A stretch of 64,000 nucleotides of DNA from Octopus sinensis. Lineage: Eukaryota. The stretch is taken from NCBI RefSeq assembly GCF_006345805.1, contig NC_043004.1:89528001-89592000 (forward strand), written 5' to 3'. Positions 333 to 49,222 of the stretch are shown here, one piece after another (position 1 is the first letter of the stretch; each line of letters opens with the position of its first letter). The notes below the pieces were generated by a model. That model made no database searches. It was not told the DNA's origin and saw nothing but the letters and a program-made list of their open reading frames with translations. A program made the translations under genes and the position numbers.

Positions 333-648
333 TGTCTGATGATATTGAACCCACAAACTAAAGATTGAAGACTGGCATTACCAAGGACACTGAGAATCTT
401 GTTTATACAACTTAAGTTCTACCACTGAAATATTTCCTTTGAATTGCAAGTAATATTTGATAATGACTGCACATATGTAACTCTAACATGGTTTCTGTGA
501 TGGTGTAACATCAAAATTTACTGAGATTTTCTTTTTGTCTTAAAGACTTTGAAGAAAGTATATCTTTTTTATTGAAAATATTTAAAGAAATATTTCCTTG
601 ATGCAAATTCCAGGAGTATTTTTTTTTATTTTGTGAAGAAAATTTGTT

Positions 649-829
649 ATGGAGGAGAAACTGAGTAAGAGTCAAGTTCATAATGAGAGACGATCTAATA
701 ATAATGGTGTTTCACATCAAATAAAGTAGACATCATACATGTGTGGCATCTGTGGGGAGTCTTTTAAAATGCAAAAATGTTTAATTTAACATCAGCCTTT
801 GTACACAGATTCTGAACTCTATGACTGAT
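649..829 (+). pseudogene. Disabled N-terminal leader and first finger of ZNF copy 1
   Basis: ATG 649 gives MEEKLSKSQVHNERRSNNNGVSHQIK, homologous to the leaders of copies 2-5. It is followed by TAG 727-729, TAA 787-789 and a 2-nt deletion near 826 relative to copy 2. Confidence 0.85.
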
Positions 830-2152
830 ATTTGTGGTAAAAAGTTCTCCACAGATGAAAATTTATCTACCCACAAACATATTCACACAGAGATGAAACC
901 ATATTGCCATGATATTTGTGGGGAGGCACTCTCTGAAGAAAATGGTTTATCTAACCACAAATGTATCCACACAGAAGAAAAACCATACCGTTGTGATATT
1001 TGTGGTAAAAAGTTCCTGAGAAATACTGGTTTGTTGAACCATATACGAATTCACACAGGAGAGAAACCATACGTCTGCAGCATTTGTGAGAAAGCATTTT
1101 CTCAACATAGTAACTTGATGAACCATAGCAGAATTCACACAGGTGAGAAACCACATCGTTGTGATATTTGTGGTAAATCATTCTCTCAAAACAGCAATCT
1201 GTTGGTTCATCGCCGTATTCACACAGGAGAAAAACCATACCACTGTGATATATGTGGTAAAGCATTTTCCCAGAATGGTAATTTATTAATCCATAGAAGT
1301 ACTCATGGAGGAGAGAAGCAATATCATTGTGATATATGTGGTAAAGGATTCTTTGTTAATTCTTCTTTAACTAGACACATACGAGTTCACACAGGTGAAA
1401 AGCCATACTGCTGTGATATCTGTGGGAAAACATTCACTGCTTCGAGTTCATTATCAATGCATAAACTTAACCATACAGGTAATAAGCCATACCACTGTGA
1501 CATTTGTGATAAAGCTTTCCTTAACAATAACACTTTGTTGAAGCACAGAAGAAGTCATACAGGTGAGAAACCATATCACTGTGATATCTGTGGCAAAGCA
1601 TTCTCTCAAAACAGCAATTTATTAACGCATACACGCATTCACACAGGTGAAAAGCCATATCATTGTGATATTTGTGACAAAACATTCTCGCAAAATATTA
1701 ATTTGATAATTCATAGGTCTGCTCACAGAGGAGAGAAACTCTATCCTTGTGATATTTGTGGTAATGCTTTCTCCAGTATTTCTTCTTTATCAACTCACAG
1801 ACGTATTCATACAGGAGAAAGACCACACTGCTGTGATATTTGCGGCAAAGCATTCACTGCTTCCAGTTCATTGTCAATGCATAAGCTTACACACACAGGT
1901 GAGAAGCCATACTACTGTGAAATCTGTGGTAAAAATTTCCCAAAAACTAGCATTTTGTTGAATCACAGACGAATTCACACAGGTGAGAAACCATACCAGT
2001 GTAACATTTGCAAGAAAGCATTCTCTCAGAATAGTAATTTATTGACCCACAAACGTGTTCACACAGGTGAGAAACCATATCAGTGTGATACCTGTTGTAA
2101 ATCATTCTCTCAAAATATCAATTTATTAACCCATAGACGTATTCATCTTTGA
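821..2152 (+). CDS. Poly-C2H2 zinc-finger protein, copy 1 (443 aa; 14 canonical + 2 degenerate fingers; possibly pseudogene)
   Basis: Uninterrupted CxxC...HxxxH / TGEKPY array. The start ATG is in frame only because of the upstream deletion. Confidence 0.8.
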
Positions 2153-12963: not shown

Positions 12964-14823
12964 ATGGAGGTAAAAGTGAGTGTAAGTCAGGTCCATAATG
13001 AAACTCAACCTGATAATAATGATGTTTCTCATCAAACAGAGAAGGCATCATACATGTGTGACATCTGTGGGGACTCTTTCAAAATACAAAAATGTTTAAT
13101 TCAACATCAGTCTATACACACAGTTTCCGAACTATATGATTGTGATATTTGTGGTGAAAAGTTTTCTACAAATGAAAATTTATCCAATCACAAACAAATT
13201 CATGCAGAGATGAAACCATATTGCTGTGATATTTGTGGGAAGGTACTTTCTGAAAAGAATGGTTTATTTAACCACAAATGTATTCATGCAGAAGAAAAAC
13301 CATACCACTGTGATATTTGTGGGAAAGAATTCTCTCAAAACAGTAAGTTATTAACCCATAGACGTATTCACACAGGAGAAAAACCATATCGTTGTGATAT
13401 CTGTGGCCAAACCTTTTCTGTTAATGGTTCATTATCTACACACAAACGTAGTCACACAGGAGAAAAACCATATCGTTGTGATATTTGTGGGAAAACGTTC
13501 TCAGCTAGTAGCACATTGTCTACACATAAACAAATTCATACTGGCGAAAAACCATACCATTGTGATATCTGTAGTAAATCATTCTCTCTAAATAGTAATT
13601 TGTTGAAACATAGACGCATTCACACAGGAGAGAAACCATACCACTGTGATATTTGTGGTAAAAAATTCTCTCATAGTAGTAATTTATTAACCCATAGACG
13701 TATACATACTGGGGAAAAACCATACCATTGTGATATTTGTGGTAAAAAATGCAATACTAAGGAACGTTTATTAAGCCACAAACGCATTCACACAGGGGAA
13801 AAACCATACAAATGTGGTATCTGTGGTAATACATTCTCTGATAAGGGGTATTTACAGTCCCATAAACTGATTCATACAGGAGAAAAACCATATCACTGTG
13901 ATGAATGTGGTAAAAAATTCTCTACAAAACAATATCTATCTAACCACAAACGTACTCATGCAGGAATAAAACCATGCCACTGTGATATTTGTGGTAAAGC
14001 ATTCTCTCGGAATAGTCACTTGTTGACTCATAAACGTATTCACACAGGTGAGAAACCATATCACTGTGATATTTGTGGTAAATCGTTCACTCTAAATGGT
14101 CATTTAACTAAACACAAACGTATTCACACAGGCGAGAAACCTTATCACTGTGATACCTGTGGTATGACATTCTCTCAGAGCTCTAATTTATTGACCCATA
14201 GACGTATTCATACAGGAAATAAACCATACCACTGTGATATCTGTGGTAAAACTTTCTCTGCCAATGATTCTTTATCCAGACACAAACGTATTCACACAGG
14301 GGAAAAACCATATCATTGTGATATCTGTGGTAAGACATTCTCTGATAGTAGTTCTGTGTCATCTCACAAGCGAGTTCATACTGGTGAAAGGCCATATCAT
14401 TGTGATATCTGTGGTAAAACATTCACTGCTAGTAATTCATTATCTACACACCAAACTATTCACACAGGCGAGAAACCATATCATTGTGATATTTGTGGTA
14501 TAAAATTCTCTAAAAATTGTAATTTAATGAGGCATAAACGTCTTCACACGGGAGAGAAACCATATCACTGTGATTTCTGTGATAAAACATTCACCTCTAG
14601 TTCTGATTTGAACACACACAAACGTGTTCATACAGGAGAGAAACCATATCACTGTGGTATCTGTGGTAAATCATTCTCTCAGAATAGTCACTTATTGAAC
14701 CATAGACGTATTCACACAGGTGATAAACCTTATCAATGTGATATTTGTAGTAAGGCATTTTCTAGAAAAGGTGACTTATTAAATCACAAACGTTTACACA
14801 GGAAAGAAACTACATCTCTATGA
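12964..14823 (+). CDS. Poly-C2H2 zinc-finger protein, copy 2 (619 aa, 21 fingers)
   Basis: Intact ORF with a ~31-aa leader then tandem CDICGK...HTGEKPY repeats. No KRAB/SCAN/BTB-like domain is evident. Confidence 0.95.
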
Positions 14824-21960: not shown

Positions 21961-22256
21961 GTATATCCTACGTCTGTCTTAACATTTGTTCTGAAAGTCT
22001 ATGGTTAGAAATTTCTTCCTTAAAGTGTCAGTATTGTAATGTTGCTTATATCATATTCTCTGTTTATATTTCAGGGTATTTGATAATATCAAGATTTTGA
22101 AGACTAAAGAAATGACATTACCAGCGATATTGGGAATCTTGTTTCACGAAGGTGATATTTGAAGAAACTGTACTCTTGAAAATACCGAAAGAAATATTTA
22201 TCTTGAAAATTAGAGAAGAAAAGTATTTTTCAATTTTGTGAAGAAAATTTGATGTT

Positions 22257-24350
22257 ATGGAGGAGGAACTAAACAAAAGTCAGATCCATAATGAAATACA
22301 ACTTGATTATAATGATGTTTCTCATCAAACGGAGAAAACATCATTCATGTGTGACATTTGTGGGGAGTCTTTTAAAATACAAAACTGTTTAATTCAACAT
22401 CAGTCTATTCATACAGATTCAGAGCTCTATAATTGTAAAATTTGTGGTGAAAAGTTCTCTACAAATGAAAATTTAATTAACCATAAACATATTCACACAA
22501 AAGAAAATCCATACCAGTGTGATATTTGTGGTAAGACATACTCTGCTATTAGATTAGCAAGAAGACACAGACTTATTCACACAAGTGGGAAGCCTTTCCA
22601 ATGTAATATTTGTGGTAAATCGTATACTGTAAATAGTAGTTTATCTAAACACAAACGTAGTCACACAGGAGAGAAACCATTCAACTGTGATATCTGTGAT
22701 AAAACTTTCACTGTTAAATTTTCTTTAACTGTACACAAACGTATTCACACAGGAGAAAAACCATACCACTGTGATATCTGTGGCAAAAAATTTTCTGCTA
22801 GAGGTTTGGCAACAAGGCATAAAATTATTCACTCGGGCAACAAGCCATATCAATGTGATATTTGTGGTAAATCGTTCTACCAAGAAAACCATTTATTGAT
22901 ACATAAACGTGTTCACACAGGAGAGAAACCATATCATTGTGATATCTGTGGTAAAACTTTCTCTGTTAAATGTTCTTTAACTATACACAGACGTAATCAC
23001 ACTGGAGAAAAACCATATCGGTGTGATATCTGTGGTAAAACGTTCACTGGCAGTACTCTGGTATCAACACACAAACTTTCTCACACTGGCAAGAGGCTTT
23101 ACAAATGTGACGTTTGTGGTAAAGGATTCAATATGAATTGTCACTTAACTAAACACAAACGTATTCACACAGGGGAGAAACCATACCCGTGTGATATTTG
23201 TGGTAAGTCATTCTCACAAACTTCAAATTTAACAACCCATAAACGTATTCATACAGGAGAAAAACCATACCACTGTGATATTTGTGGTAAAAAGTTCTCC
23301 ACAAATGAGCATTTATCTAACCACAAATATATACACACAGGGGAAAAACGATATCACTGTGATATTTGTGGTAAAGCATTCTCCCAAAGAGGTAATTTAA
23401 AGCCTCATAAGCTTCTTCACTCAGGAGAAAAACCTTATCACTGTGATATATGTGGTAAAAATTTCTCTACCAAAGATTATTTATCTAATCACAAACGCAT
23501 TCATTCAAAGGTAAAAACATGCCGTTGTGATATTTGTGGTAAAGCATTCTCTCGAAATAGGGATTTATTGACACATAATCGCATTCACACAGGTGAGAAA
23601 CCATATCATTGTGATGTTTGTGGTAAATCATTTACTATAAGTGGTCATTTAACTAAACACAAACGTGTTCATACAGGAGAAAAACCATACCATTGTAGCA
23701 CCTGTGGTAGAATGTTCTCTAATAGTTCGATTTTATTGGCCCATAAACGTATTCACACAGGAGAGAAACCATACCACTGTGATATCTGTGGTAAATCATT
23801 CACTATAAGTGGATCTTTAACCAAACATAAACGTATTCACACAGGTGAAAAACCATTCCATTGTAATATTTGTGGTAAAACTTTCTCTGAAAGTAGTTCT
23901 GTAATATCTCATAAACGCGTTCACACTGGAGAAAAGCCATATCATTGTGATATCTGTGGAAAAACATTCACTGCTAGTGTTTCATTATCTACACACCAAA
24001 CAATTCACACAGGAGAGAAACCATATGACTGTGATATATGTGGTAGATCATTCTCGCGATCTTGTAATTTATCAAGGCATAAACGTCTTCACACAGGAGA
24101 TAAACCGTATCATTGTGATTCATGTGAAAAAACGTTTACTTCTAATTCTGATTTAAACACACACAAACGTATTCACACAGGAGAGAAACCATATCACTGT
24201 GACATCTGTGGTAAGTCATTCTCTCAAAATAGCCATTTATTGAACCATAAACGTATCCATACTGGTGACAAACCATATCGCTGTGATATTTGTAGTAAGG
24301 CATTCTCTCAACAAAGTACTTTGTCTGTCCACAAACGTATACACAGGTGA
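22257..24350 (+). CDS. Poly-C2H2 zinc-finger protein, copy 3 (697 aa, 24 fingers)
   Basis: Intact ORF with leader MEEELNKSQIHNE... and a tandem C2H2 array. Acceptor tttcAG at 22073-22074. Confidence 0.95.
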   Translation: MEEELNKSQIHNEIQLDYNDVSHQTEKTSFMCDICGESFKIQNCLIQHQSIHTDSELYNCKICGEKFSTNENLINHKHIHTKENPYQCDICGKTYSAIRLARRHRLIHTSGKPFQCNICGKSYTVNSSLSKHKRSHTGEKPFNCDICDKTFTVKFSLTVHKRIHTGEKPYHCDICGKKFSARGLATRHKIIHSGNKPYQCDICGKSFYQENHLLIHKRVHTGEKPYHCDICGKTFSVKCSLTIHRRNHTGEKPYRCDICGKTFTGSTLVSTHKLSHTGKRLYKCDVCGKGFNMNCHLTKHKRIHTGEKPYPCDICGKSFSQTSNLTTHKRIHTGEKPYHCDICGKKFSTNEHLSNHKYIHTGEKRYHCDICGKAFSQRGNLKPHKLLHSGEKPYHCDICGKNFSTKDYLSNHKRIHSKVKTCRCDICGKAFSRNRDLLTHNRIHTGEKPYHCDVCGKSFTISGHLTKHKRVHTGEKPYHCSTCGRMFSNSSILLAHKRIHTGEKPYHCDICGKSFTISGSLTKHKRIHTGEKPFHCNICGKTFSESSSVISHKRVHTGEKPYHCDICGKTFTASVSLSTHQTIHTGEKPYDCDICGRSFSRSCNLSRHKRLHTGDKPYHCDSCEKTFTSNSDLNTHKRIHTGEKPYHCDICGKSFSQNSHLLNHKRIHTGDKPYRCDICSKAFSQQSTLSVHKRIHR

Positions 24351-24454
24351 AAATCTACACCTCTGTATTTGATTTAGAACATTATCATATTAATATTTTA
24401 ACTGTGAAATTGAATTTTATGATTATTACAGAAATGATGATGTATATATATGAA

Positions 24455-24790
24455 TCATCATCATCATCGTTTAACGTCCGTTCTCCATGCTAGCATGGGT
24501 TGGACGGTTCGACCGGGGATCTGGGAAGCCAGAAGGCTGTGCCAGGCTCCAGTCTGATCTGGCAGTGTTTCTACAGCTGGATGCCCTTCCTAACGCCAAC
24601 CACTCCATGAGTGTAGTGGGTGCTTTTTACATGCCACCGGCACAGGTGCTAGGCGAGGTTGGCAACGGCCACAATCGGATTGGTGCTTTTTACGTGCCAC
24701 CGGCACGGAAGCCAGTCAAGGCGGCTCTGGCATCGGCCACATTCGGATGGTGCTTTTTACGTACCATTAGCACGGAAGGCAGTCAAAAAG
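24455..24790 (-). mobile_element. RTE LINE 3' UTR fragment ~100 bp after the copy 3 stop
   Basis: (CAT)n + CGTTTAACGTCCGTTCTCCATGCTAGCATGGG, the reverse complement of the tail at 43100-43170. Confidence 0.85.
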
Positions 24791-26392
24791 TAGAATTGTT
24801 ATTTTCTGAAAATTACATTGCATCAGTAGACTTGATATATTTCAACAGAAACTCATTCCACTTATGACATTCCTCAACAAAAGATAGATTGCAATATAAA
24901 ACTGCTTTCAGCAGTTAAGAGGATTGGAAATTTGAGTGAATATTTCTGCTTTCTTCTGTGAACATGTAAAGTTTTTTTGTAGCAAATCAGCCAAGTATTT
25001 TGTGGAGCCAATGTGCAGGAAATAAGTTGTGTGAGCTATATCTATATATTTACCATCAACAATTGAAAGAAGAAAAAGGAGGTCCTTTCAGTTCATTAAC
25101 TAAATTTCTCATAATAAATTTTTATCATTAAAGAACTTATTTTGTATATTGTGGCTGGTATTTATTGAGCCACCACTGATAAGTGTCATCTTTCATAAAA
25201 TTCAACCAGAGTTATCATCTGATGTGATGTAATTGGAAACTCTGAGCAGCTACTCCGAGACTTCAGCTCTTAATAAATCTTATGCCATTCTACTTTACTC
25301 TTTTTTGTATTTATTTTGCTTCATTGTGTATATATTTTTTTATATATTAATGTACATACACACATAAATCTAATGCATGTAAATTTTGTGTGTGTATATA
25401 TATATAATTTATGGATGTGAAAAATCTCCATTCTCCTTATAATTATTAATATTATTAATTACTCTATAGAAGATATGCAGTCCTGAGCAAGACACACAAT
25501 TACCAAACTCGAAAAACTTGACGAGGGCTTGGCCAAAGAGAAAAGGAGCTATCTTCTCCCCTTTCTCTCTGTTCCACAACACAACCTCTTTCACTAAAGA
25601 CATTCTATCTTCCCATAGAAAGTCAAGGTGGTAGGATAATCTTAAAGAACTAAGCTGATAGCAGGATCTGTCCTACATGTACCAGCAGGTGTTTGACATA
25701 TCTCTACAAATTAGCAATGTTCAAGTACTATTTATCAGTCCTGAATGTAGAATAGTTTCATTGCTCTGTGCACACCTCAAGCAGGCCTGATGAAGAATTA
25801 GGGTCCTGTGTCTGTCCCATGTGCACATTTTGTAGTATTTAATGCATTTTTCATTTATGTAGAGTTAAACTCAAACTGACAATGCTCCCGTGTAGCTTTG
25901 CTAGACTAGAGATTTCTGGAAATTGTCCATGGGTCATGGCCCAAAATCATTCAAAACAAACCAGCTGGTTGATTTCCAGCAATCTTCCTGAGATTGTTGT
26001 CACTTTTGCTTGCCACTTTATAAAACACCTCATCCACCAACATTCCAGTTGTCCTTGTCTTGGTCTTTGCTTGACCCAGGAAACGATAATTATGTCAAAG
26101 AGGAGAAGATGACAAAAAAGGGGAAAGGGAAAGATGATGAAAGAGAGGAAGGACAAGAAGAATAGGAATGTAAAAGGGATTAAGAAATAAAATAAAAGAA
26201 TGGCACAAGGCCAGCAATTTTAGTGGGAAGGAATTAGCTGATTATATTGACTCTAGTACTTGATTGATATTTTATTTTTTTCAAGGATGAAAGGCAAAAT
26301 AACTTTGGTGGTATCTGAATTTAAAATGTGTTAAATGCTGAAAGAAATGCAGTTAAGTATTTTGCTAGCTTGTCCACATAAACAATAATAAT

Positions 26393-26761
26393 AATAAGAG
26401 CACTCAGAGAGTGCAAATCTCTGCCAAGGCAACACCAATGTCCTCTCAATGATTAGCTGGAGATGATTTTTAAAATGAGAATATCTGAAATAAACTCAAC
26501 TGTTCTCACAAATGAGAATACTAAAACTGAACCTGATTGCTCTCAAAAATTAAGTAAAAAAAAACTGGGAAAATAATCCAGAATCCTTGTCCAATACCAG
26601 ATTGATCTCAAAATTTAATCAGTTCCTGCCAGTCATGAGGCTAAATATCCCTGAAAGTTTCATCCAAATCCATCCAGCAGTTCTTGAGATATCTTGTCCA
26701 TGGACAAACAAACAAATACAACTGAAAACAATACCTCCGCTTTCGCTAAGGAGGAGGTAAT
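26393..26761 (+). mobile_element. Non-autonomous Helentron/HINE-like element
   Basis: Homologous to 2447-3097; 3' hairpin ACCTCCGCTTTCGCTAAGGAGGAGGT. Confidence 0.6.
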
Positions 26762-28448
26762 TATTTTCTACAGTAAGTACAAGGTCTGAAATTTGTGTGT
26801 GTGGTGGGGGTCTTGTCAATTACATTGACCCCAGTGCTCGACTCCAAAAGGATGAAAGGCAAAGATGGCCTCAGCAGAATTTGGAGTCAGAATGTAAATA
26901 TGGGCAAAATAACACCAAGCATTTTGTCCAGCATGCTAACAATTCTGCCAGCTTGCTACCTTAAGAAAGTTCTAACTGGGCCCCTCCTGTGAGGTCATGC
27001 ATTGTTTTTATTGATATGAAATCACTATGTCATGCACATATGGTTGTGATGCATGTGCCTGGTGTACCCTTGTCAAACGGGTACTTATGATGGGTATACT
27101 GGGCTTCGTATATTTTACCCCAGTGTCACTTTGATGGCATGCGCTGTGCTCTCAATGATAATAATAATGATAATCTTTTCTACTAAAGGCACAAGGCCTG
27201 AAATTTTGTGTGTTTCACAATTTCTCATACTTTCTAGGAGTAATAAAGGGTAAAGACACCCTTTGGTCATAAATGACCATGCGATTGCACCTAGAAAGTT
27301 CCCCTCTGAGGCACAAGTCCAAGCAGGGTTGCTTGTGGAAGACCAGTAGTCACCTTTGCATACCAACATCCCCTCTCCACACCATCAATGTTATCCAAGG
27401 GAAAGGCAAAGGCCAATACAGCTTGGCATCAGTGACATTGCAACTCATTTCTACAGTCAAGTGAACAGGAACAATGTGAAATAAAGCATCTTGCTCAAGA
27501 ACACAACACAGCTTGGTCTGGTAATCAAACTCAATACCTTGTGATTGTGAGCCCAACACTACAACCATTGGGCCCATCAATTTGCCATCCCATTCTCCAA
27601 AATTTCAGGATTAGTGCCCATAGTAGAAAGGATTATTATTATGACTAAGGCAGTGAGTTGGCAGAATTGTCACTGTGCCAGAGAAAATGCTTAGCATAAT
27701 TTCTTCACCTTTTCCGGGTTGATAAAATTATTAGTTGAGCACTGGGGTCAATGAACTTGACTTAAATCTCCATTCAATATGGCTGGTGTTGTGCTAAAAT
27801 TTTGATCAAGGCAGTCTTCCGTTCTGAGTTCAAATTCTGCTAAGGTCGACTTTGCCTTTCATTCATTCGGGATCGATAGAAAAAAGTACCAGTTGAGTAC
27901 TGGGGTCAATTTAATCGACTATCCCCCTTCTTCCAAATTTCAGGCCTTGTGCCTATAGTAGAAAGGATTATTATTATGACTGACCTATATAAATGAGAAA
28001 TAAAATTATATTTAAAACCGTGAAGGCTATAGTTGCAGTAGTAATGATACAACAAAGTTAAGTTTTTTGTTTTTCAATGGCTATTGTGTTCCATACTGTA
28101 ATTGCAATATACAAAACACACATACACATATATATATATATATATATCATATATATTCATGTATACAGGAATCTGTTAAATTCCACATTATTTTTCAAAA
28201 TTATCGTGAAAATTTGAAAAGCTACAAATGGTTGGAGGAAATTTAACAAGATCCAAAATATATGTGGTCAACCGAAGAGCCCAAATTCCACAACGTAAAA
28301 CAAGCATGGATAAACTTTTTCGAGAAGAGGGTCGCATGAGACATGGTTCATTATTACGTGGCTGCACGTCTGAATTAAAATTCCGTCATTTTCCTCTAGG
28401 AAAGCCATTCAGTGAGACCCATCAAACATAATCGACCTGTGACTGCTA

Positions 28449-30240: not shown

Positions 30241-30340
30241 AAGGAAATGTTTTAGGGGGGCAGATATTCTACTGCTTGATGTTCTCTCTGCTTCCAAGCA
30301 AAGTAATATTTCCCCATGGTTAGACATGATTTTTCAAAAT

Positions 30341-30630
30341 CATCATCGTTTAACGTCTGTTTTCTATGCTAGCATGGGTTGGACGATTTGACTGATGGCT
30401 GGCGAACCAGACAGCTGCACCAGGCTTCAATCTTGATCTGGCAGAGTTTCTACAGCTGGATGCCCTTCCTAACGCCAATCACTCCGAGGGTGTATTGGGT
30501 GCTTTTATGTGTCACCGGCATGAGGACCAGTCAGGCGGTACTGGTAACGGCCACGCTCAAATGGTGTTTTTTACGTGACACCTGCACAGGAGCCAGTCCA
30601 GCGGCACTGGCAACGACCTCGCTCGAATGT
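30341..30630 (-). mobile_element. RTE LINE 3' UTR fragment
   Basis: (CAT)n CGTTTAACGTC...CAGCTGGATGCCCTTCCTAACGCC. Confidence 0.8.
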
Positions 30631-32879: not shown

Positions 32880-34101
32880 ATAAATGAAAAAATGCATTAA
32901 ATGCTACAAAATGTGCACATGGGATAGACACAGAAGGACTCTAATTCTTCATCAGATGAAGAATTAGGATCCTTCAGTGTATGTTTTGCATTTTTCATTC
33001 CAGCCGTAGAAACATTGCTAGATCAGACTGGGCCTGGTGCAGCCTTCTGGCTTCCCAGACCCCAGTTGAACCGTCCAACCCATGCTAGCATGGAAAGCGG
33101 ACGCTAAATGATGATATATATAATATATATATATATATATGTGTTTGTATTTGTCTCTGACCACTGCTTGACAACTGGTGTTGGTTTATTTCCATCCCCA
33201 TTATTTATCAATTTGGCAAAAGAGACCAATAACACAAGTACCAGGCTTAATAAATAAGTTACTGGGGTTGATTCATTCAAGGCAGTGCTCCAGCATGGCT
33301 ACAGTCTAATGACTGAAACAAGTAAAAGATGTGTTGTTATTAATGAGATTGTGTAGACGGTGAAATGGCAGAATTGTTGGCACGCTGGACGAAATGCTTA
33401 ATGGTATTTCGCTATTGCTATATTCTGAGTTCAGATTCCGCTGGGGTTGACTTTGCCTATCATCCTTTTGGAGTAAATGAAATAAGTACCAGTGAAACAC
33501 TGGGGTCGATGTGATTGACTAGTCCCCTCCCACAATTTCAGGTAGTACTGTATTACTTACAGGTATAATGACATTGTTTGGTTTAGTATTTCCTCCATAC
33601 CTGTGATAACACTGAAAAAATAACTAGAATATAGCTTCACTACCTAGATTGATTACTTTTCTCTCTGAATGAATCATTATCATTGGACTCTGGTAATTTA
33701 CAGGTATAGTGATGTCTCCGTACATCAGTAGTTAACTGCACCCATTTCATCCGCATACGCATACCATTCTGTCTTTTTTTCTGTGTATATACTCTCACTG
33801 TATTTTTGTATTTTATCATTTTCTGTGTTTTCAATGTCTGTGATCAAAAATTTCTTCTCTCTGTTATCATTGTATTGTTTCTTACATCATACTCCCTATA
33901 TGTATTTCAGGGTATCTGATGGTATTGAGATTTTGAAAATGAAAGAATGACTTGACCAAAGATATAGGGAACATTGTTTGAGAAAGTTCACTGAAGAAAC
34001 TATATTCATTATTGAAATTATCGAAAGAAATATTTCTCTGAAAATTACAGAACTATGGGTTTTTAGAAAATTTTATTTATTTGTAAGTAAACCTGAAAGT
34101 T

Positions 34102-35775
34102 ATGGAAGATGAACTGAATGAGAGTCAGGTCCATAATGAAACACAGCCTGATGATAATAATGTTTCTCATCAAACAGAGAAGGCATCATACATGTGTGAC
34201 ATCTGTGGAAAGTCTTTTAAATTTAGAAGACATTTAATTCAACATCACTCTGTTCACAAAAGCCAGAAACCATACAAATGTGATGTTTGTGGTAAAACAT
34301 ACTCTTTAAATAGTAGTTTATATAAACACACACTTTCTCACACAGGAGAGAAACCATACCATTGTGATATCTGTGGTCAAAATTTCTCTGTTAAATATTC
34401 TTTAACTTTACATAAACGTATTCACACAGGTGAAAAGCCATATCACTGTGATATCTGTGGTAAAAGGTTCTCTGTTAGTAGTTCAGTAACGGTGCACAAA
34501 GTTATTCACACAGGCCAGAAACCATACCATTGTGATATCTGTGGTAAAGCATTCAGTTTCAGTTCCTATCTATCTAAACATAAACGTCTTCACACAGGGG
34601 AGAAGCCATGCTGCTGTGATATTTGTGGTAAGACATTCACACAAATTTCTCATTTAAAAACTCATACACGTGTTCACACAGGAGAAAAACCGTATCACTG
34701 TGATGTTTGTGGCAAAAAGTTCTCTACAAATGAACATTTATCTAGTCACAAATATGTTCACACAGGGGTAAAACGATATCACTGTGATATTTGTGGTAAA
34801 GCATTCCCCCGAAGTGGCAATTTAAAGATCCATAAATTTCTTCATACAGGAGAAAAACCTTATCACTGTGATATATGTGGAAAAAACTTCTCTACAAATG
34901 ATTATTTATCCAACCACAAACGCATTCATTCAAAGGTAAAAACCTGCCGTTGTGATATTTGTGGTAAAGCATTCTCTCGAAATAGGGATTTATTGACACA
35001 TAATCGCATTCACACAGGTGAGAAACCATATCATTGTGATGTTTGTGGTAAATCATTTACTATAAGTGGTCATTTAACTAAACACAAACGTATTCACACA
35101 GGGGAGAAACCATTCCATTGCAGTATCTGTGGAAAAAACTTTGCTAGAAGTGGATATTTATCCCAACATAGACGTATTCACACAGGAGAGAAACCATTTC
35201 ACTGTGATATCTGTGGTAAAAATTTCGCTTTAAGTGGATCTTTAACCAAACATAAACGTATTCACACAGGTGAAAAACCATTCCATTGTGATATCTGTGG
35301 TAAAACTTTCTCTGAAAGTAGTTCTGTAATATCTCATAAACGTGTTCACACTGGAGAAAAGCCATATCATTGTGATATCTGTGGAAAAACATTCACTGCT
35401 AGTAATTCATTATCTGCACATCAAACTATTCACACAGGAGAGAAACCATACGGCTGTGATATATGTGGTAAAGCTTTCTCGCGATCTGGTAATTTATTGA
35501 GACATAAACATATTCACACAGGACATAAACCATATCAGTGTGACATATGTGATAAAACGTTCTCTTGCAGTTCTTACTTAGATAAGCACAAACATGTTCA
35601 CAATGGAGACAAGCCATACCATTGTGACATCTGCGGTAAATCATTTTCTCAAAATAATCATTTATTGAATCATAGACATATTCATACAGGCGACAAACCT
35701 TATCACTGTGGTCTTTGTGGTAAAACATTCTCTCAACAAAGTACTTTGTCTGTCCACAAACGTTTACACAATTGA
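34102..35775 (+). CDS. Poly-C2H2 zinc-finger protein, copy 4 (557 aa, 19 fingers)
   Basis: Intact ORF with leader MEDELNESQVHNE...; acceptor tttcAG at 33909-33910. Confidence 0.95.
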   Translation: MEDELNESQVHNETQPDDNNVSHQTEKASYMCDICGKSFKFRRHLIQHHSVHKSQKPYKCDVCGKTYSLNSSLYKHTLSHTGEKPYHCDICGQNFSVKYSLTLHKRIHTGEKPYHCDICGKRFSVSSSVTVHKVIHTGQKPYHCDICGKAFSFSSYLSKHKRLHTGEKPCCCDICGKTFTQISHLKTHTRVHTGEKPYHCDVCGKKFSTNEHLSSHKYVHTGVKRYHCDICGKAFPRSGNLKIHKFLHTGEKPYHCDICGKNFSTNDYLSNHKRIHSKVKTCRCDICGKAFSRNRDLLTHNRIHTGEKPYHCDVCGKSFTISGHLTKHKRIHTGEKPFHCSICGKNFARSGYLSQHRRIHTGEKPFHCDICGKNFALSGSLTKHKRIHTGEKPFHCDICGKTFSESSSVISHKRVHTGEKPYHCDICGKTFTASNSLSAHQTIHTGEKPYGCDICGKAFSRSGNLLRHKHIHTGHKPYQCDICDKTFSCSSYLDKHKHVHNGDKPYHCDICGKSFSQNNHLLNHRHIHTGDKPYHCGLCGKTFSQQSTLSVHKRLHN

Positions 35776-36779: not shown

Positions 36780-37220
36780 CTCGCAGGGCGGCCTGCAGTG
36801 CTAACCTTGGATTGTAGAGTGACCTGCTGTTCTTGAGGAGACCTATTGAGTCAAGTACATCAACATCAAAATAAAAATTCAAATAGAAATTGTAGTTAAG
36901 ACACCCGTGCCGGTGACACGTAAAAAGCACCGTCCGAACGTGGAAGATGCCAGCGCCGCCTGACTGGTGTCCATGTTGGTGACATGTAAAAGTACCAACC
37001 GATTGTGGCTGTTTGCCAACCTGCTCTGGCCCCTGTGCCGGTAGCATGTAAAAAGCACCCACTACACTCACGGAGTGGTTGGCGTTAGGAAGGGCATCCA
37101 GCTGTAGAAACACTGCCAGATCAGACTGGAGCCTGGTGCAGCCTCCATGGCTTCCAGACCCCAGTCGAACCGTCCAACCCATGCTAGCATGGAAAATGGA
37201 TGTTAAATGATGATGATGAC
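36780..37220 (+). mobile_element. RTE LINE 3' UTR fragment
   Basis: CACGTAAAAAGCAC repeats, GGCGTTAGGAAGGGCATCCAGCTG and a (GAT)n tail. Additional fragments near 33000, 36270, 37790 and 38110. Confidence 0.8.
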
Positions 37221-39630
37221 GACTGTGATGCCAACATCCTGCCTGTACACATGGACTTAAAAATTCAGAAGATGCCTTGTGTTGTTTTAGCAGAATTGAT
37301 ACTACTTGACCTGAACTAACCAATAGAAGCCACCTTGAATTCCTGTCAAATCTACTCTACTTCTAGCTTCTGATGAGATGGACATTTCCTGTGAGCCAAT
37401 GATATTTTTAGTTGTGGAACTGTCTCAAACTTTCATAATTATATAAATATGTGCATGTATGTGTGTGTGTGTGCCAGTTATCAGTGTAAGACTTAGATTT
37501 TGAGAAGGAAAAACTAAAAGTCATGAAGTCAACAAGGAGTCTTAACTGTGCCTACTAAACATAACTCAGTCTAACACTACTTGTCTTTATATGGAATTCT
37601 GTGGGTGTGTGATGTATCTACATTATAACAGTACTTTTCATTCACAATCTGGTAAGTATTAAAGTTTAGAAACATTTTGCTTATCTTTAGATTTGGAGAT
37701 TAAAAACTACTTGTTTCTGGGATGCAGAATATGTTATGAACTTACTAAGAGTTTAGGACTTTTTGTATTTTATTTCTTATAAATAATGAATAGGTGTGGA
37801 TCACTGGATCCTGTCAAACTCTCCAACTCATGCCAGCATGGAAAATGGATGTATAATGAAGATGATGAGGTACCTAATCATGCTCTGTTTTACAGTTTCG
37901 TGTTCAGTATTTTATAAAATATGTGCGGTAAGAAGTTTGCTTCACAAGCACATGGTTCAAGGTTCAGTTTCATTGTGGAACTTTGGGCAAGTGTCTTCTG
38001 CTGTAGTCCCCGGGCTGACCAAAGCCTTGCAAATGGATTGAACCTTACAATATGTGGTGCATCGCTGTACTTGAGAAGACCTGCCAACCACAATAGGATT
38101 CAGATCTAAAAAACAAGGTACCGTGTAAAATGCATTGATGTGGGTGCTGGTGCCACATAAAAAGCACTGGTGATGGTGCCATGTGAAAAGCATCCAGTAC
38201 ACTCTGTGGATTTGTGGGTGTTAGGAAGGGCATCCAGCTGTAGAAACTAAGCCAAAACAGGCTATGAAACCTGGTGCAGCACCTGGCCTTGTCATTTCCT
38301 GTCAAACCAATGCCAGCATGGAAAATAGATGTTAAATGTTGATGATGATGATGTTGATATGTCTGTGTCTGTGTCAGTGTCTCCTTGCGTTCACACCATG
38401 TGATAGTTGTAAATGAATATCACTGTTATGCTTGTGGTGTCCTCTGTTCTCAATCTTCCATGAGAAAACGTGTCTGGTTTGGGGGAAGTATGACCTTACT
38501 TGGAAATAGGTGAAGGTCAGTGCCGAGAAGGACATATCTGCTACAACAAAATCCCATCCAACCCATGTGAGCAAAGAATAGTGAGCATAAAAATAATGAG
38601 AGAAATCTATGCACATCGCACACAAGAAAAATTAGGTTTTAGAAATTATAGAATATGATAGTGCTGTTCATATAGAACAGAAGTGGAAATTATCTGGTGT
38701 TCCAATAACCATAATCAACCATCTTCTGTTATAGCTTCAGGCTGACCAAAGCCTTGTGAGTGGATTTAGTAGACAGAAACTGTGAGAAGCCTGTCATATA
38801 TATATGTATATATTTATGTGTTTGTCCCCCAACCCTTGCTTGATAATTGATGCTGGTATGTTTATGTTGCCGTAACTTAGCAGTTTGGCAAAAGAGACCA
38901 AGAGAATATGTACCAGGCTTACAAAAAATAAGTCCTGGGGTTGATTTCTTTGACTTAATGGCGATGTTCCAGCATGGCCGCAGTCAAATGACTGAAACAA
39001 ATAAAAGAAAAAATGCAGATGGTGAGTTTAGATGTTCCCTTTTTTTTTAGCTTTGGTATTCTTTGGGATTTATATTTCAAACTTCTGACATGATTCTTCA
39101 GAAATACCTTTATCTTTCATTTGTTTGTCATTGGACTGAGGAGCTCCAGCATAGTCAAACTGATCAAACTTCTGCCAAGTACTTATTTTTTACATTTTAA
39201 GTCGGGTACTGCTGTCAATATCTTTTGCTGAACTGCTAATGTTATGGGGACATAAACAAACTGACACCAGTTGCCAAGTGATGGGGAAGTAAAAAGGCAC
39301 ACACACACACACACACATATGACTGTCTCCTTATAGTTCCATCTACCAAGTTCCTTCACAAGGCATTGGTCAGCTTGGAGCTAGAGCAGAAAACTTGCCT
39401 ATGCAATGCAATGGGACTGAACCTGAAGCCACATGGCTGCAAAGTAAACTTCTTAATTGCACATGCCTGCTTAACTTCTTAAAAGAGTCAGCCATGTGTC
39501 CATCAATATAATGATTGTCCTGAATTTTCGAGGAATACGTTAAGAGATGGGGATAGTGAATATAAAGTTGAAGTGATGTTATTTATATTTGTCTTTGCCA
39601 TATGTAGTCATCAATTTAAAAATTGCCTGA

Positions 39631-40479: not shown

Positions 40480-41547
40480 GTGAAAGTGTTCCCCTGCAAA
40501 GAAATGTTAAAGGATAAGGAAGAGAGAACAATTGTTTACAGGACATATGCAGTGGCAACAAGAAAAATAGAAGTGGTGTTGGATGCACAAGTTGAAAAAG
40601 CGTTGAGGCCAGCTTGGCAAGGGATTTCTTACCTTGCCAGAAGAAAGAAGTTTGGAACAGTGGAGGTGCAGTTCTGGGAGGTATCTACCATCAGGCTGTA
40701 CTCAGCAACACCATTAAAAACAGATGAAGTGGTGCTTCTACCTGCATAACTTGGGAGGTGTGTGTCAAGGATTAGAGTAGAAGACATGCCCTCAGAAGTG
40801 GATGTAGCCTGGCTAGTAGCTGCCATACTGCTAGGCATGGAAGAAAAGATAGTGGTCCTGCAGACCATCAGAACACCCTACAGAAACTGGTAAGAGCAGA
40901 GCCTGGACATGGTAGTACAGGTGGCCCCAGAGGATATTGAAGGTATGGTGGAAACCATTACGGTCGCAGACATGACACTGAAAGTTAGAGTGGAAGGGAG
41001 GATTCCGCGGTGCTATAAATTTGGCCTGAAAGGCTACATTAGAGCAGATTGTCCCTCACCACATGTGAAGGCTAAGGAAAGGCAAGAGAGTGAGAAAGTA
41101 GTTGATACTCCACTGCCCATGGAAGCTGAGGAGGAAACTGAACTGGCACAGCAGATGCAAACAAGTACCAGCGTCGAGGAAGAGGAGAACACCAGCTGGG
41201 AAATGAATGGCAGGAAAAAAAAGAAGGAAGAGGAGAAAAAAGACACATGTGGTAAAGGACAACCCCAACCCACACCCACCTGGCTCCCACCCACACCCCC
41301 ACTATCTACAATCACCAATTCTTCCCATACCCCACCTGACATAAACACAAGCACAAACACACAGGAGCCCCAAATTTTCCCACCCTGGCCCCTGGATAAA
41401 TTTGTAATATTGTATAACAGGAAAAAGGGAGAACTTTGTTATGAGATAAAGACATGGGACAGAGCAATAGAAGTGGACATAACAAGGGTGGAGGGGAGTA
41501 GCCCAAGGATGTTTGCTGTACAGTGGCGGACCCGGAATACCTCTTGA
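40480..41547 (+). pseudogene. Gag-like ORF1 of a non-LTR retrotransposon (L1/Tx1-like), two in-frame stops
   Basis: ORFs 40480-40749 and 40909-41547 are in one frame, separated by TAA 40747 and TAA 40891. They contain the degenerate zinc knuckle RCYKFGLKGYIRADCP followed by an acidic/basic low-complexity tail. Confidence 0.6.
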
Positions 41548-44950: not shown

Positions 44951-46193
44951 AAGCTATGTACTTTTTCACAGCATACCTAATGACGAGCGTAATACAATAT
45001 CTTAATACAGAACGAATATTGTGTAGACTTCATTAAAAAATCCGGTACTAGTATCGTAGAGTGGTATTGTTAATGAGATAAGCTTTTAAAAGAAAACGAA
45101 GGTGATAGTCTTTGAAAAATTCTTTGACAAAAAGAATCTTTTCTGAAGGTTGCCACCATTATCTACATGACCGCGAATCTCACAGTGGTGTCCATTTCCA
45201 TAGTAACAAGCAAAGCTGTAGTCTGCCCTGTTTTCATTGTAACAAAGACGCGTTGTACTTAGCACGACTGTGACACGTTCATCACCACAAGTTTTGATGA
45301 GCGATATTTTGTGCCTGGGCCATTTCTGTCGATTTCTAATAGACAGAAATTTCTAATAAACAGAAAATGCAAGCTTCCCATTCTTGTTTTCTGACTGGAA
45401 TAAAAATTATCAAACTTTGAAACTCTGTATCATTTGTGTAAGTTTTTTTTGGTGAACAAACGAGTCCCAAATTCGGATTCAGTGTGAAAAATTGCATCCA
45501 TATTTCAAATTCGAAAAATTTCAATCAATTTGATAATTTCCAAATCTGTGACTAGCTGAAAAAATTTGATAAAAGTAATTGATGCAAGGTCTGTTGTTCT
45601 TAATTTAATGATAAGGGATACTATGATACCTGCTGGTATTGCAACAGTATTTGGTCCATTATCTCCTCCATACCTGTGGTAACACTCAACAAATTATGAT
45701 AGTGTGTACCATCACTAAATAAAGTGATTTCCTTTCTCTTTGAATAAATCATTGGCCTCAGTCACAGATTCTTGTGTTTTACAGATGTAGTAATGACTGA
45801 TTACATCAGTGAGTGATATTGATTACTCATTTGGTTGACATCACTCATTTCAGTCATCCTCATACCATTGTTTCTTTGCTCTGGGTGTATATATATCCTG
45901 TCTCTCTTAACATTTGTTTTCAATATCGATGGTCAGAAATCTCTTCCTTCAGTGTCAGCATCATATTGTTGTTTCTATCATATTCTCTTTATATATTTCA
46001 GGATATATGATGGTATCAAAACTTTGAAGAGTGAAGAATGGCATTATCAAAGATACAGGGAATCATGTTTCACAAAAATCACATTGAAGAAACTGTACCC
46101 TAATTTTGAAAATAAAGAAGAATAAAAGAATTATTTCTCTGTTGAGAATTACAGGATAAGGTTTTCTACTTTTCTGAAGGAGATTTGAAAATT

Positions 46194-48376
46194 ATGGAGG
46201 AGAAACTGAGTGAGGATCAGTTCCATAAGAAAAGACAAAGTGATAATGATGTTTCTCATCAAACAGATAAGACATCATACATGTGTGACATCTGTGGGAA
46301 GTCTTTTAAAGTTAAGAGGTATTTTGTTCGACATCAGTCTGTTCACAAAAGCCAGAAACCATACCATTGTGATATTTGTGGTAAATCATATGCTTTAAAT
46401 AGTAGTTTGTCTAAACATAAACGTAGTCACACTGGAGAGAGACCATACTGTTGTGATATTTGTGGCCACAGTTGCATTTTTAAATTTTCTTTAATTATAC
46501 ACAAACGTACTCACACAGGAGAAAAACCATATGATTGTGATATTTGTGGTAAGAAATTCTCTACTAGTGGTGCTGTAACAACGCATAGAATTATTCATAC
46601 AGGCAACAAACGGAAACTGTGCCAGTGTGACATTTGTGGTAAGACTTTCTCCCAAGATAACAATTTAGTGATACATAAACGTGTTCACACAGGAGAGAAA
46701 CCGTATCATTGTGATATCTGTGGTAAAACTTTCTCTGTTAAATGTTCTTTAACTATACACAGACGTAATCACACTGGAGAAAAACCATACCGGTGTGATA
46801 TCTGTGGTAAAACATTCTCTGGCAGTACTCTGGTATCAACACACAAGCTTACTCACTCAGACAAGAAACCGTACAAATGTGATGTTTGTGACAAAGCATT
46901 TCATCTGAATAGCCTTTTGAATAAACACAAACGTATTCACACAGGTGAGAAACCATATCAGTGTGATATTTGTGGTAAGTCATTCTCACAAACTTCAAAT
47001 TTAAAGGCCCATAAACGTATTCATACAGGAGAAAAACCATATCACTGTGATATTTGTGGTAAAAAGTTCTCTATAAATATACATTTAACTAATCACAAAA
47101 ATAGTCACACTGGGATAAAACGATATCCCTGTGATATTTGTGGTAAAGCATTCTCTCAAAGAGGCAATTTAAAGATTCATCAACTTCTTCATACGGGTGA
47201 AAAACCATATCACTGTGATACATGTGGTAAAAATTTCTCTACAAGTCAGTATTTATCAAATCACAAACGTACTCATGCAGAGGTAAAAACCTGCCACTGT
47301 GATATTTGTGGTAAAGCATTCTCTCGAAATAGGGAGTTATTGATCCATAATCGTATTCACACAGGTGAGAAACCATACCATTGCAATATTTGTGGTAAAT
47401 CTTTCACTACAAATGGTCATTTAACTAAACACAAACGTGTTCATACAGGAGAGAAACCGTACCATTGTGATATCTGTGGTAGAATGTTCTCTGGTAGTTC
47501 TAATTTATTGACCCATAAACGTATTCACTCAGGAGAAAAACCATTCCACTGTGATATTTGTGGTAAAGCATTCTCTCGAAATAGGGAGTTATTGATCCAT
47601 AATCGTATTCACACAGGTGAGAGAAACCATACCATTGCAATATTTGTGGTAAATCTTTCACTACAAATGGTCATTTAACTAAACACAAACGTGTTCATAC
47701 AGGAGAGAAACCGTACCATTGTGATATCTGTGGTAGAATGTTCTCTGGTAGTTCTAATTTATTGACCCATAAACGTATTCACTCAGGAGAAAAACCATTC
47801 CACTGTGATATTTGTGGTAAAAGTTTCACTGTAAGTGGAACCCTATCCAGACACAAACGTATTCACACAGGTGAAAAACCTTACCATTGTGATATTTGTG
47901 GTAAAACCTTCACTGATCATAGTTCCCTGCATTCTCATAAACGTGTTCATACTGGTGATAGGCCATATTGTTGTAATATTTGTGGTAAAACATTCACTGC
48001 CAGTGTTTCATTGTCTGCACACCATATTGCTCATACAGGAGAAAAACCATATGGTTGTGATATCTGTGGTAAATCATTCTCACGATCTTGTAATTTATCG
48101 AGGCATAAGCATCTTCACACAGGAAAGAAACCGTATGATTGTGATTCATGTGAAAAAACTTTCAGTTCTAATTATGATTTAGCCATACACAAACGTATTC
48201 ACACAGGAGAGAAACCATACCCCTGTGATATCTGTGGTAATGCATTTGCTCAGAAGAGTCATCTATTGAGGCATAAACGTATTCACACAGGGGATAAGCC
48301 TTATCACTGTGGTATTTGTAATAAAGCATTCTCTCAACAAAGTACTTTATCAACCCATAAACGCATACACAAATGA
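46194..48376 (+). CDS. Poly-C2H2 zinc-finger gene, copy 5 (22 unique fingers + 3 duplicated; frameshifted at ~47621 as assembled)
   Basis: ATG 46194 has the conserved leader (the ORF track starts at TTG 46185). Frame 1 ends at 47678, and the array continues in another frame to TGA 48376. Confidence 0.85.
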
Positions 48377-49140: not shown

Positions 49141-49222
49141 ATATATGTATATATATATATATATGTATATAGATATATATATATATATATATGTATGTAT
49201 ATATATATATATATATGTATTA

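What the first reader, a model, noticed from the sequence alone, without database searches (positions are those of the whole stretch)
22897..23978. Copy 3 is a mosaic: finger-scale sequence exchange among paralogs
23520-23666 is identical to copy 4 34945-35091 (147 bp), and 23806-23978 differs from 35231-35403 at 3 of 173 sites. The finger between them is strongly divergent (GRMFSNSSILLAH vs GKNFARSGYLSQH) and resembles copy 5 (GRMFSGSSNLLTH). 22897-23074 matches copy 5 46669-46846 at 174 of 178 sites, in fingers copy 4 lacks. Fingers 1-2 match copies 1/2, while the short UTR matches copies 4/5. This points to gene conversion or unequal crossover shuffling DNA-binding specificity combinatorially.
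Basis: partly seen in the sequence, partly recalled or inferred. Interest (0 to 1): 0.75.

Follow-up and report, generated by a model that had tools for sequence, protein, structure and literature searches.

The report
Gene-conversion patches among octopus zinc-finger paralogs
One of five neighbouring zinc-finger genes in the octopus genome shares three ~150-190-base near-identical patches with two sister copies, the footprint of recent copy-and-paste (gene conversion) between duplicated genes, which is real here but already well known for this gene class.

Summary
The window is Octopus sinensis chromosome CM016866.1. It holds five tandem KRAB-less C2H2 poly-zinc-finger ORFs; c3 is 22257-24350 with 24 fingers.

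Background divergence is about 15% (dS about 0.5), and flanking non-coding DNA is only about 75% identical. The three tracts pass GENECONV-style permutation tests (p&lt;0.0002 to 0.0006). They survive a third-codon-position test (p=0.002 and 0.02). Per-finger synonymous divergence is heterogeneous only for pairs that include c3.

Short-tract ectopic gene conversion involving c3 is therefore the best explanation.
- The divergent finger between the c3-c4 tracts is derived in copy 4. Copy 3 there is only background-similar to copy 5.
- The UTR versus finger 1-2 "conflict" fits one tree plus one deletion.
- Segment-wise topology tests show no significant tree incongruence.

Direction of transfer and any functional "combinatorial shuffling" are untested. 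No independent assembly was available to exclude assembly artefacts. This is a new instance of a known process; interest is modest.

The parts
22257..24350 (+). Copy 3 (c3): uninterrupted ORF of 697 aa with 24 C2H2 fingers at strict 84-bp period. It has a 31-aa leader and no KRAB, SCAN or BTB domain.
   Evidence: the exact product is called on GCA_006345805.1 CM016866.1 89550257-89552350
22897..23074 (+). c3-c5 near-identity tract: 174/178 identical to 46669-46846. The maximal scoring segment is 22898-23084. It runs from F07 aa15 to F09 aa18. Copy 4 lacks these fingers.
   Evidence: p<0.0002; third positions p=0.0022
23150..23299 (+). Weaker second c3-c5 tract around F11 (150 bp, 7 mismatches; includes a 44-bp identical run at 23189-23232).
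   Evidence: (pairwise p=0.0024, Bonferroni 0.014)
23520..23666 (+). c3-c4 tract A: 147/147 identical to 34945-35091. It runs from F14 aa27 to F16 aa19.
   Evidence: (21 consecutive concordant polymorphic sites, global p=0.0007)
23667..23805 (+). Divergent island between the two c3-c4 tracts (tail of F16, all of F17, head of F18). Copy 3 keeps the state shared with c5 and c2; copy 4 carries the derived sequence.
   Evidence: (12 c4 singletons in F17)
23806..23978 (+). c3-c4 tract B: 170/173 identical to 35231-35403. It runs from F18 aa10 to F20 aa11.
   Evidence: p<0.0002; third positions p=0.021
22073..22256 (+). Conserved splice-acceptor-like site (tatttcAG|GG, AG at 22073-22074) followed by 182 nt of 5'UTR before the ATG. 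It is ~75% identical to the same region of c4 and c5. c1 and c2 carry an extra ~130 bp here.
   Evidence: The acceptor function is inferred from consensus and conservation and was not tested.
34102..35775 (+). Copy 4 (c4): 557 aa, 19 fingers. It is the partner of tracts A and B (34945-35091, 35231-35403). Its F12 (35119-35202) and F17 (35539-35622) are the lineage-specific divergent fingers.
46185..48376 (+). Copy 5 (c5): partner of the 22897-23074 tract (46669-46846). The ORF is split by a frameshift inside a perfect 252-bp (3-finger) tandem duplication at 47298-47549 / 47550-47803 that carries a 2-bp GA insertion.
12964..14823 (+). Copy 2 (c2): 619 aa, 21 fingers. c2 F04-F21 are collinear with c3 F07-F24. 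It was used as the polarising outgroup.
648..2152 (+). Copy 1 (c1): most divergent copy. Its leader and F01 carry in-frame stops and a frameshift (pseudogenised 5' end). The remaining ORF is 821-2152. It shares the long UTR and the c2/c3-type F01.

Best explanation
Copy 3 is one of five tandem, KRAB-less C2H2 poly-zinc-finger paralogs in Octopus sinensis. The c3, c4 and c5 copies diverged long ago (coding dS about 0.5; flanking non-coding identity about 75%). Since then copy 3 has taken part in several short-tract, in-register ectopic (interlocus) gene conversions. At least two involved its neighbour copy 4 (23520-23666 and 23806-23978). At least one involved copy 5 (22897-23074, possibly also ~23150-23299). 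Each tract is about two finger units long, and its edges lie inside fingers.

The strongly divergent finger between the two c3-c4 tracts is an unconverted island at baseline synonymous divergence. Its excess amino-acid change is specific to copy 4. High local divergence there plausibly terminated or blocked heteroduplex formation (inferred).

Whole-finger gains and losses arise separately, by unequal in-register exchange or slippage between 84-bp units. These are c4 lacking F07-F09, c4 and c5 lacking F02-F03, and the c5 3-finger duplication.

Shown: the tracts, their significance, and their persistence at synonymous sites. Inferred: the recombinational mechanism, the number of events, and blocking by divergence. 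Unknown: direction of transfer and any effect on DNA binding.
For: The tracts have 0-2% divergence against a ~15% pair background. Permutation tests on polymorphic sites give c3-c4 p=0.0006 (global 0.0007), and p<0.0002 for c3-c4 23806-23975 and c3-c5 22898-23084. The third-position-only test gives c3-c5 p=0.0022 and c3-c4 p=0.021.

NG86 synonymous divergence: c3-c4 dS is 0.12 in F18-20 against 0.59-0.63 in F17 and F21-22. c3-c5 dS is 0.22 in F07-09 against 0.52 in F18-20. Per-finger synonymous heterogeneity is significant only for the c3 pairs (c3-c4 p=0.0002, c3-c5 p=0.0065). The control pairs are homogeneous (c4-c5 p=0.28, c3-c2 p=0.29).

The triplet site-pattern test gives among-finger heterogeneity p<0.0002 and runs p=0.0008. 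The PHI-like test gives p=0.02 at 100 bp. Similarity does not extend into flanking DNA: only ~300 bp upstream aligns, at ~75%. This excludes a recent whole-gene duplication. In the tracts the other copies are normally polymorphic, so the tracts are not simply slow-evolving. GENECONV-detected conversion among poly-ZF paralogs is documented in other animals (PMC2604467; bioRxiv 10.1101/2022.11.29.518450).
Against: Strict synonymous-only site-pattern tests are marginal (n=80; runs p=0.14, max-chi2 p=0.043, heterogeneity p=0.10). Quartet-informative sites are not significantly heterogeneous among fingers (p=0.12). ML topology tests do not reject a single tree in any segment. Tracts show no GC3 enrichment, so there is no signature of GC-biased conversion. 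Only one assembly is available, and no reads, haplotypes or orthologous clusters could be obtained.
Confidence: 0.7

Rival explanations
1. No exchange occurred. The patchwork reflects finger-specific and lineage-specific rate variation on one tree: strong constraint on some fingers, and positive selection or relaxation on others (for example c4 F12 and F17).
For: Most of the signal in all-site tests comes from non-synonymous change. The strict synonymous test is marginal. Copy 4's odd fingers are dominated by c4-specific non-synonymous singletons. No segment significantly rejects the common quartet topology. F15 is conserved in all copies.
Against: Synonymous and third-position differences are also depleted in the tracts. 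The tests condition on sites that are polymorphic among the copies. The c4-c5 and c3-c2 synonymous divergences are homogeneous across the same fingers, so the fingers are not intrinsically slow. 0/147 and 3/173 differences against dS ~0.5 would need a >10-fold local drop in neutral rate in one pair only.
Confidence: 0.1
2. Assembly or polishing artefact. Short-read polishing or consensus errors in the PacBio/Hi-C assembly locally homogenised paralogs, or copy 3 is a chimeric consensus.
For: There is a single assembly only. The tract sizes (147-178 bp) are close to a short-read length. Copy 5 carries a 100%-identical 252-bp duplication with a 2-bp indel, which looks like a possible assembly error. 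The sequencing and polishing method is recalled from memory and was not checked here.
Against: At ~15% background divergence, short reads from one copy should not mis-map to another, so polishing could erase only a few differences and could not create the pattern (inference). Two of the three tracts are not identical (3 and 4 mismatches). Three separate patches with two different partners, embedded in unique copy-3 sequence, do not look like a single chimeric join. The copies are ~11 kb apart, a distance long reads can span.
Confidence: 0.1
3. Copy 3 is a hybrid gene made by one or a few unequal crossovers between misaligned tandem paralogs (reciprocal exchange), rather than by short non-reciprocal conversions.
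For: Copy 3 lies between copies 2 and 4 and contains the union of all finger positions. Its 5' end is c1/c2-like and its body is c4/c5-like. Unequal exchange demonstrably occurs in the cluster.
Against: The 5' pattern is explained by one tree plus a deletion. Similarity alternates c5 / c4 / none / c4 / (c5) over less than 1.2 kb. That would need at least four crossovers, each generating copy-number change. Similarity also stops at the ORF: the flanks are not shared with either partner beyond ~75% identity over ~300 bp. A hybrid with an upstream-gene 5' end and a downstream-gene 3' end is the deletion product and should not coexist with both parents (inference).
Confidence: 0.08

Closest known systems
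Interlocus gene conversion among lineage-specific tandem poly-zinc-finger (mostly KRAB-ZNF) paralogs in vertebrates, detected with GENECONV (Emerson & Thomas 2009, PMC2604467)
   Same: Tandem paralogs encoding long C2H2 arrays, short conversion tracts between in-register fingers, frequent differences in finger number between paralogs, and high amino-acid turnover at helix positions.
   Different: These are octopus genes with no KRAB, SCAN or BTB domain. The evidence comes from a single genome. The conversion partners are ~11 and ~23 kb away, in a five-gene array that includes two damaged copies.
PRDM9 zinc-finger coding minisatellite (e.g. PMC3890296)
   Same: The 84-bp finger unit is the currency of unequal exchange and conversion, and finger content is reshuffled.
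   Different: PRDM9 fingers within one array are near-identical at the DNA level and recombine out of register within or between alleles. Here fingers within a gene are only ~56/84 identical, and the exchange is in register between paralogous genes. The one clear out-of-register event is the 3-finger duplication in copy 5.
Cephalopod C2H2-ZNF expansion (Albertin et al. 2015 as cited; PMC12513265)
   Same: Octopus tandem clusters of many-finger C2H2 genes. This window is one such cluster in O. sinensis.
   Different: A term search of PMC12513265 found no mention of recombination, conversion or unequal exchange. Tract-level conversion in this expansion was not described in the papers I could search.

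Membership tests
C2H2 poly-zinc-finger protein gene | Tandem C-X2-C-X12-H-X3-H units joined by TGEKP-type linkers | tested here: met
   There are 24 units at exact 28-aa spacing. Pfam zf-H2C2_2 scores E=7e-178 and zf-C2H2 scores E=3e-114.
KRAB-ZNF (vertebrate type) | N-terminal KRAB (PF01352) effector domain | tested here: not met
   No KRAB, SCAN or BTB family appears among the Pfam hits. The leader is only 31 aa. An upstream coding exon cannot be excluded.
Interlocus (ectopic) gene conversion between paralogs | Discrete tracts with significantly fewer differences than the pair's background, judged on polymorphic sites | tested here: met
   p=0.0006 and p<0.0002 for two tracts.
Interlocus (ectopic) gene conversion between paralogs | The depletion of differences also holds at synonymous or third-codon positions | tested here: met
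   Third-position tests give p=0.0022 and 0.021. Per-finger Sd heterogeneity gives p=0.0002 and 0.0065, with homogeneous control pairs. The strict aa-identical codon test is only marginal.
Interlocus (ectopic) gene conversion between paralogs | Phylogenetic incongruence between tract and flanks | tested here: inconclusive
   AU and ELW tests reject no topology per segment. Quartet-site heterogeneity gives p=0.12. The PHI-like test gives p=0.02 at 100 bp only.
Interlocus (ectopic) gene conversion between paralogs | Non-reciprocal transfer with identifiable donor and recipient | not testable with these tools
   This needs orthologous clusters or population haplotypes, and none were retrievable.
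Unequal crossover / slippage in a finger array | Indels in whole multiples of the 84-bp unit, and tandem duplicated finger blocks | tested here: met
   The copies have 19, 21, 22 and 24 fingers with collinear maps. Copy 5 has a 252-bp perfect duplicate. Copy 1 shows lag-5 periodicity.
PRDM9-like coding minisatellite | Near-identical DNA repeats within one array | tested here: not met
   Mean within-gene finger identity is 55-58/84.

The most novel reading that the evidence does not exclude
In the cephalopod ZNF expansion, recurrent two-finger-sized conversion between neighbouring paralogs acts as a generator of new finger combinations. Fingers under lineage-specific selection (copy 4 F12 and F17) are actively protected as unconverted islands, so specificity-defining fingers are kept private while the backbone fingers are pooled across the cluster.
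Probability: 0.1. Interest if true: 0.55.

Novelty: new member of a known kind. Interest (0 to 1): 0.3.

Why it matters
The finding shows that at least one octopus C2H2-ZNF cluster evolves by the same processes long known for vertebrate poly-ZNF clusters: gene conversion plus finger-unit gain and loss. This has practical consequences. Gene trees, dN/dS scans and duplication dating for the cephalopod ZNF expansion can be misled unless converted tracts are masked. Paralogs can also share blocks of recognition helices. Here c3 equals c4 at F14-16, F19 and F24, and equals c5 at F08, F09 and F21. Predicted binding motifs of neighbouring genes are therefore not independent. It does not open a new question.

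Tried and rejected
(1) A full-length protein search with c3 was swamped by generic vertebrate poly-ZNFs. The best hit was 54-56% identical and there was no ortholog.
(2) A search restricted to the unique N-terminal leader found nothing.
(3) A search with the F14-F20 junction piece, meant to catch short read-derived contigs, gave a best hit of 63% identity, a different O. sinensis ZNF.
(4) Exact-sequence look-ups of c1-c4 found only the one assembly. The cluster look-up returned 'not in collection'. No haplotype or sister-species comparison was therefore possible.
(5) I tested whether the c4/c5 finger 1 is an F01/F03 fusion left by the two-finger deletion. The 3' part matches F03 no better than F01 (21/36 vs 20/36), so this was dropped.
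(6) I looked in the window for a donor of copy 4's odd fingers. c4 F12 is closest to its own neighbour c4 F13 (68/84, sharing KNFA.SG.L). That is only about 2 sd above the non-orthologous background of 56±6. c4 F17 has no match above 61/84. An out-of-register intragenic conversion is possible but not demonstrated.
(7) Segment-wise ML topology tests were non-significant.
(8) There is no GC-biased-conversion signature in GC3.
(9) No further ZNF ORF lies within ~9 kb upstream of copy 1.
(10) Copy 5 was analysed as two separate ORF pieces and was not read through its frameshift.

Full report
WHAT IS THERE

The window is AT-rich eukaryotic DNA. Exact-product look-ups place it on NCBI assembly GCA_006345805.1, chromosome CM016866.1, at about 89.53-89.59 Mb. 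A paper names that assembly as Octopus sinensis.

The window holds five same-strand C2H2 poly-zinc-finger ORFs about 11 kb apart:
- c1, 821-2152. Its leader and finger 1 upstream carry stops.
- c2, 12964-14823, 21 fingers.
- c3, 22257-24350, 24 fingers.
- c4, 34102-35775, 19 fingers.
- c5, 46185-48376, 22 fingers plus an internal duplication that breaks the frame.

Fingers sit at a strict 84-bp period. Pfam finds only C2H2-type families, with no KRAB, SCAN or BTB domain. A conserved acceptor-like tatttcAG|GG lies about 180 nt upstream of each ATG. The finger arrays are therefore probably single coding exons preceded by a short UTR segment (inferred). Between the genes lie SINE-like copies, a reverse-transcriptase fragment and a 3.5-kb (TA)n block.

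CHECKING THE OBSERVATION

All three identity statements reproduce exactly: 147/147, 170/173 and 174/178. A finger-register map shows the copies are collinear apart from whole-finger indels:
- c2 F04-21 aligns to c3 F07-24.
- c4 F02-04 aligns to c3 F04-06, and c4 F05-19 to c3 F10-24.
- c5 F02-15 aligns to c3 F04-17, and the last seven c5 fingers to c3 F18-24.
- c4 lacks c3 F07-09. c4 and c5 lack c3 F02-03.

Background divergence is 14.8% for c3-c4, 15.1% for c3-c5 and 20.3% for c3-c2. Under those rates the tracts are wildly improbable (1e-8 to 5e-9).

Paralogy outside the ORFs is limited to ~300 bp upstream at ~75% identity. The copies are therefore old, and the near-identical tracts are islands inside the coding arrays rather than remnants of a recent duplication.

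IS IT EXCHANGE OR SELECTION?

I used a GENECONV-style test that permutes the order of polymorphic sites.
- The c3-c4 run of 21 concordant polymorphic sites (23524-23641) has pairwise p=0.0006 and global p=0.0007.
- With a mismatch penalty, c3-c4 23806-23975 and c3-c5 22898-23084 both have p<0.0002.
- A weaker c3-c5 tract at 23150-23299 has p=0.0024.

Restricting the test to third codon positions keeps c3-c5 (p=0.0022) and c3-c4 (p=0.021).

Nei-Gojobori synonymous divergence follows the same mosaic. c3-c4 dS is 0.12 in F18-20 and 0.25 in F12-16, against 0.63 in F17, 0.59 in F21-22 and 0.41-0.52 in F04-11. c3-c5 dS is 0.22 in F07-09 against 0.52 in F18-20.

A useful internal control is that per-finger synonymous differences are heterogeneous for c3-c4 (p=0.0002) and c3-c5 (p=0.0065) but homogeneous for c4-c5 (p=0.28) and c3-c2 (p=0.29). 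The fingers are therefore not intrinsically fast or slow. Copy 3 specifically has been involved in something with each partner.

Triplet site patterns are strongly clustered when all sites are used (among-finger p<0.0002, runs p=0.0008).

WEAKNESSES

- With only codons whose amino acid is identical in all three copies (80 sites), the clustering is marginal (p=0.04-0.14).
- Quartet-informative sites are not significantly heterogeneous among fingers (p=0.12).
- A PHI-like test reaches p=0.02 only at the 100-bp window.
- ML topology tests never reject the overall best quartet tree ((c3,c4),(c2,c5)) in any segment.

The case therefore rests on the discrete tracts, not on demonstrable tree switching. 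The tracts show no GC3 excess.

(1) The divergent finger. Using c2 to polarise, 12 of the differences in F17 are singletons of copy 4, while c2, c3 and c5 agree. The same holds for F22, with 15 singletons. c3-c5 divergence at F17 is 14.3%, equal to the 15.1% background. Copy 3 therefore did not import this finger from copy 5. Copy 3 keeps the common state and copy 4 carries a lineage-specific version. Its excess is mainly non-synonymous, on baseline synonymous divergence. The island at 23667-23805 is best seen as unconverted sequence between two conversion tracts. One continuous event is excluded unless repair was patchy, because a donor or recipient would then share the island.

(2) The 5' end. 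Copies 1 and 2 share a ~130-bp UTR segment and the c2/c3-type finger 1. Copies 4 and 5 share a remodelled finger 1 and lack F02-03. The tree ((c1,c2),(c3,(c4,c5))) explains both characters with one event each, so no mosaic is needed there.

(3) Modularity. Tract edges fall within fingers: F14 aa27 to F16 aa19, F18 aa10 to F20 aa11, and F07 aa15 to F09 aa18. The exchange is about two fingers long but does not respect finger boundaries.

(4) Direction. With c3, c4 and c5 roughly equidistant at baseline, either direction gives the same pattern. Copy 3 is the common partner, but it may be donor or recipient.

MECHANISM

The most likely mechanism is short-tract, in-register, non-allelic gene conversion between tandem paralogs during recombinational repair. 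Tract ends are set by local sequence divergence (inferred from general knowledge of homologous recombination).

Unequal exchange at the 84-bp unit acts separately. The evidence is the whole-finger indels among copies, a 100%-identical 252-bp (3-finger) tandem duplicate with a 2-bp insertion in copy 5, and an older 5-finger periodicity in copy 1.

One consequence is that copy 3 shares the -1/2/3/6 helix residues with copy 4 at F14-16, F19 and F24, and with copy 5 at F08, F09 and F21. Whether this changes or pools DNA-binding specificity is untested.

RIVALS

Rate heterogeneity without exchange is disfavoured by the synonymous and third-position results and by the homogeneous control pairs (confidence 0.1).

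An assembly or polishing artefact cannot be excluded without reads. It is unlikely, however, to create three patches with two partners from a 15% background, and two of the patches are not identical (confidence 0.1).

A hybrid gene formed by reciprocal unequal crossover would need at least four crossovers within 1.2 kb and would share flanks with its partners, which it does not (confidence 0.08).

COMPARISON WITH WHAT IS KNOWN, AND NOVELTY

GENECONV-detected short conversions among lineage-specific poly-ZF paralogs, and frequent finger-number change, were reported across animals by Emerson & Thomas 2009 (PMC2604467). [quoted passage not shown] The cephalopod C2H2 expansion is well described, but a term search of a recent dedicated paper found no mention of conversion or recombination.

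This is therefore a new instance of a known process in a lineage where it had not been spelled out, not a new kind of thing. Interest is modest at 0.3. Its main value is as a caution for phylogenetic and selection analyses of the octopus ZNF expansion.

WHAT LED NOWHERE

All three protein-database searches, the exact-sequence cluster look-up and the contig look-ups failed to give orthologs, haplotypes or read-derived contigs.

Noticed in passing
window 47298-47803 (copy 5): A perfect 252-bp (exactly three fingers) tandem duplication. The second unit is 100% identical except for a 2-bp GA insertion near 47619-47620, which shifts the frame and splits the ORF (46185-47678 / 47738-48376). It is either a very recent in-register unequal exchange in a now-broken gene, or an assembly error.
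   Followed up: partly
window ~648-2152 (copy 1): The leader and finger 1 of copy 1 carry in-frame stops and a frameshift, so its 5' end is pseudogenised. The remaining 14-finger array shows a 5-finger periodicity (lag-5 identity 62/84 against 55/84 background), suggesting an old internal 420-bp duplication.
   Followed up: partly
window 35119-35202 and 35539-35622 (copy 4 F12, F17): Two copy-4 fingers are nearly as different from their positional counterparts (60-61/84) as unrelated fingers are (56±6/84), with mostly copy-4-specific non-synonymous changes. F12 resembles its own neighbour F13 (68/84, shared KNFA.SG.L). This hints at out-of-register intragenic conversion or at lineage-specific selection.
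   Followed up: partly
c3 coordinates 23255-23375 (c4 vs c5) and 23943-24008 (c2 vs c4): There are further candidate conversion tracts between other pairs. c4-c5 in F12-F13 gives p=0.0066 at third positions. c2-c4 has a 66-bp tract in F20 with p=0.0028. Exchange may therefore not be restricted to copy 3.
   Followed up: no
window 22073-22074 and the homologous sites upstream of c2, c4, c5: A conserved polypyrimidine tract plus AG|GG acceptor-like motif lies about 180 nt upstream of each ATG. This implies an upstream (probably non-coding) exon and a shared gene structure. Copies 1 and 2 have an extra ~130 bp in this UTR.
   Followed up: partly
window 24439-24775, with copies at 36905-37222(-), 42852-43164(-), 52680-52848(-), 30339-30629(+), 33000-33138(-): A ~320-bp SINE-like repeat (87-92% identity between the closest copies) is inserted about 90 bp after the copy 3 stop codon and scattered through the intergenic regions.
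   Followed up: no
window 49140-52679: A 3.5-kb degenerate (TA)n microsatellite (79% matches) lies directly downstream of copy 5. It explains the GC trough and the spurious 230-aa 'ORF' at 51680-52372.
   Followed up: yes
window 58231-59001 (-): An ORF with a weak reverse-transcriptase (RVT_1) match (E=1.7e-5, below the Pfam cut-off), probably a LINE fragment. The ORF at 40909-41547 (+) has no Pfam hit.
   Followed up: partly
window 26381-26764 vs 2435-3100: DNA 2.0-2.4 kb downstream of copy 3 matches DNA 0.3-0.95 kb downstream of copy 1 at ~84-85% identity. It could be a remnant of the ancestral 3' flank or a shared repeat.
   Followed up: no
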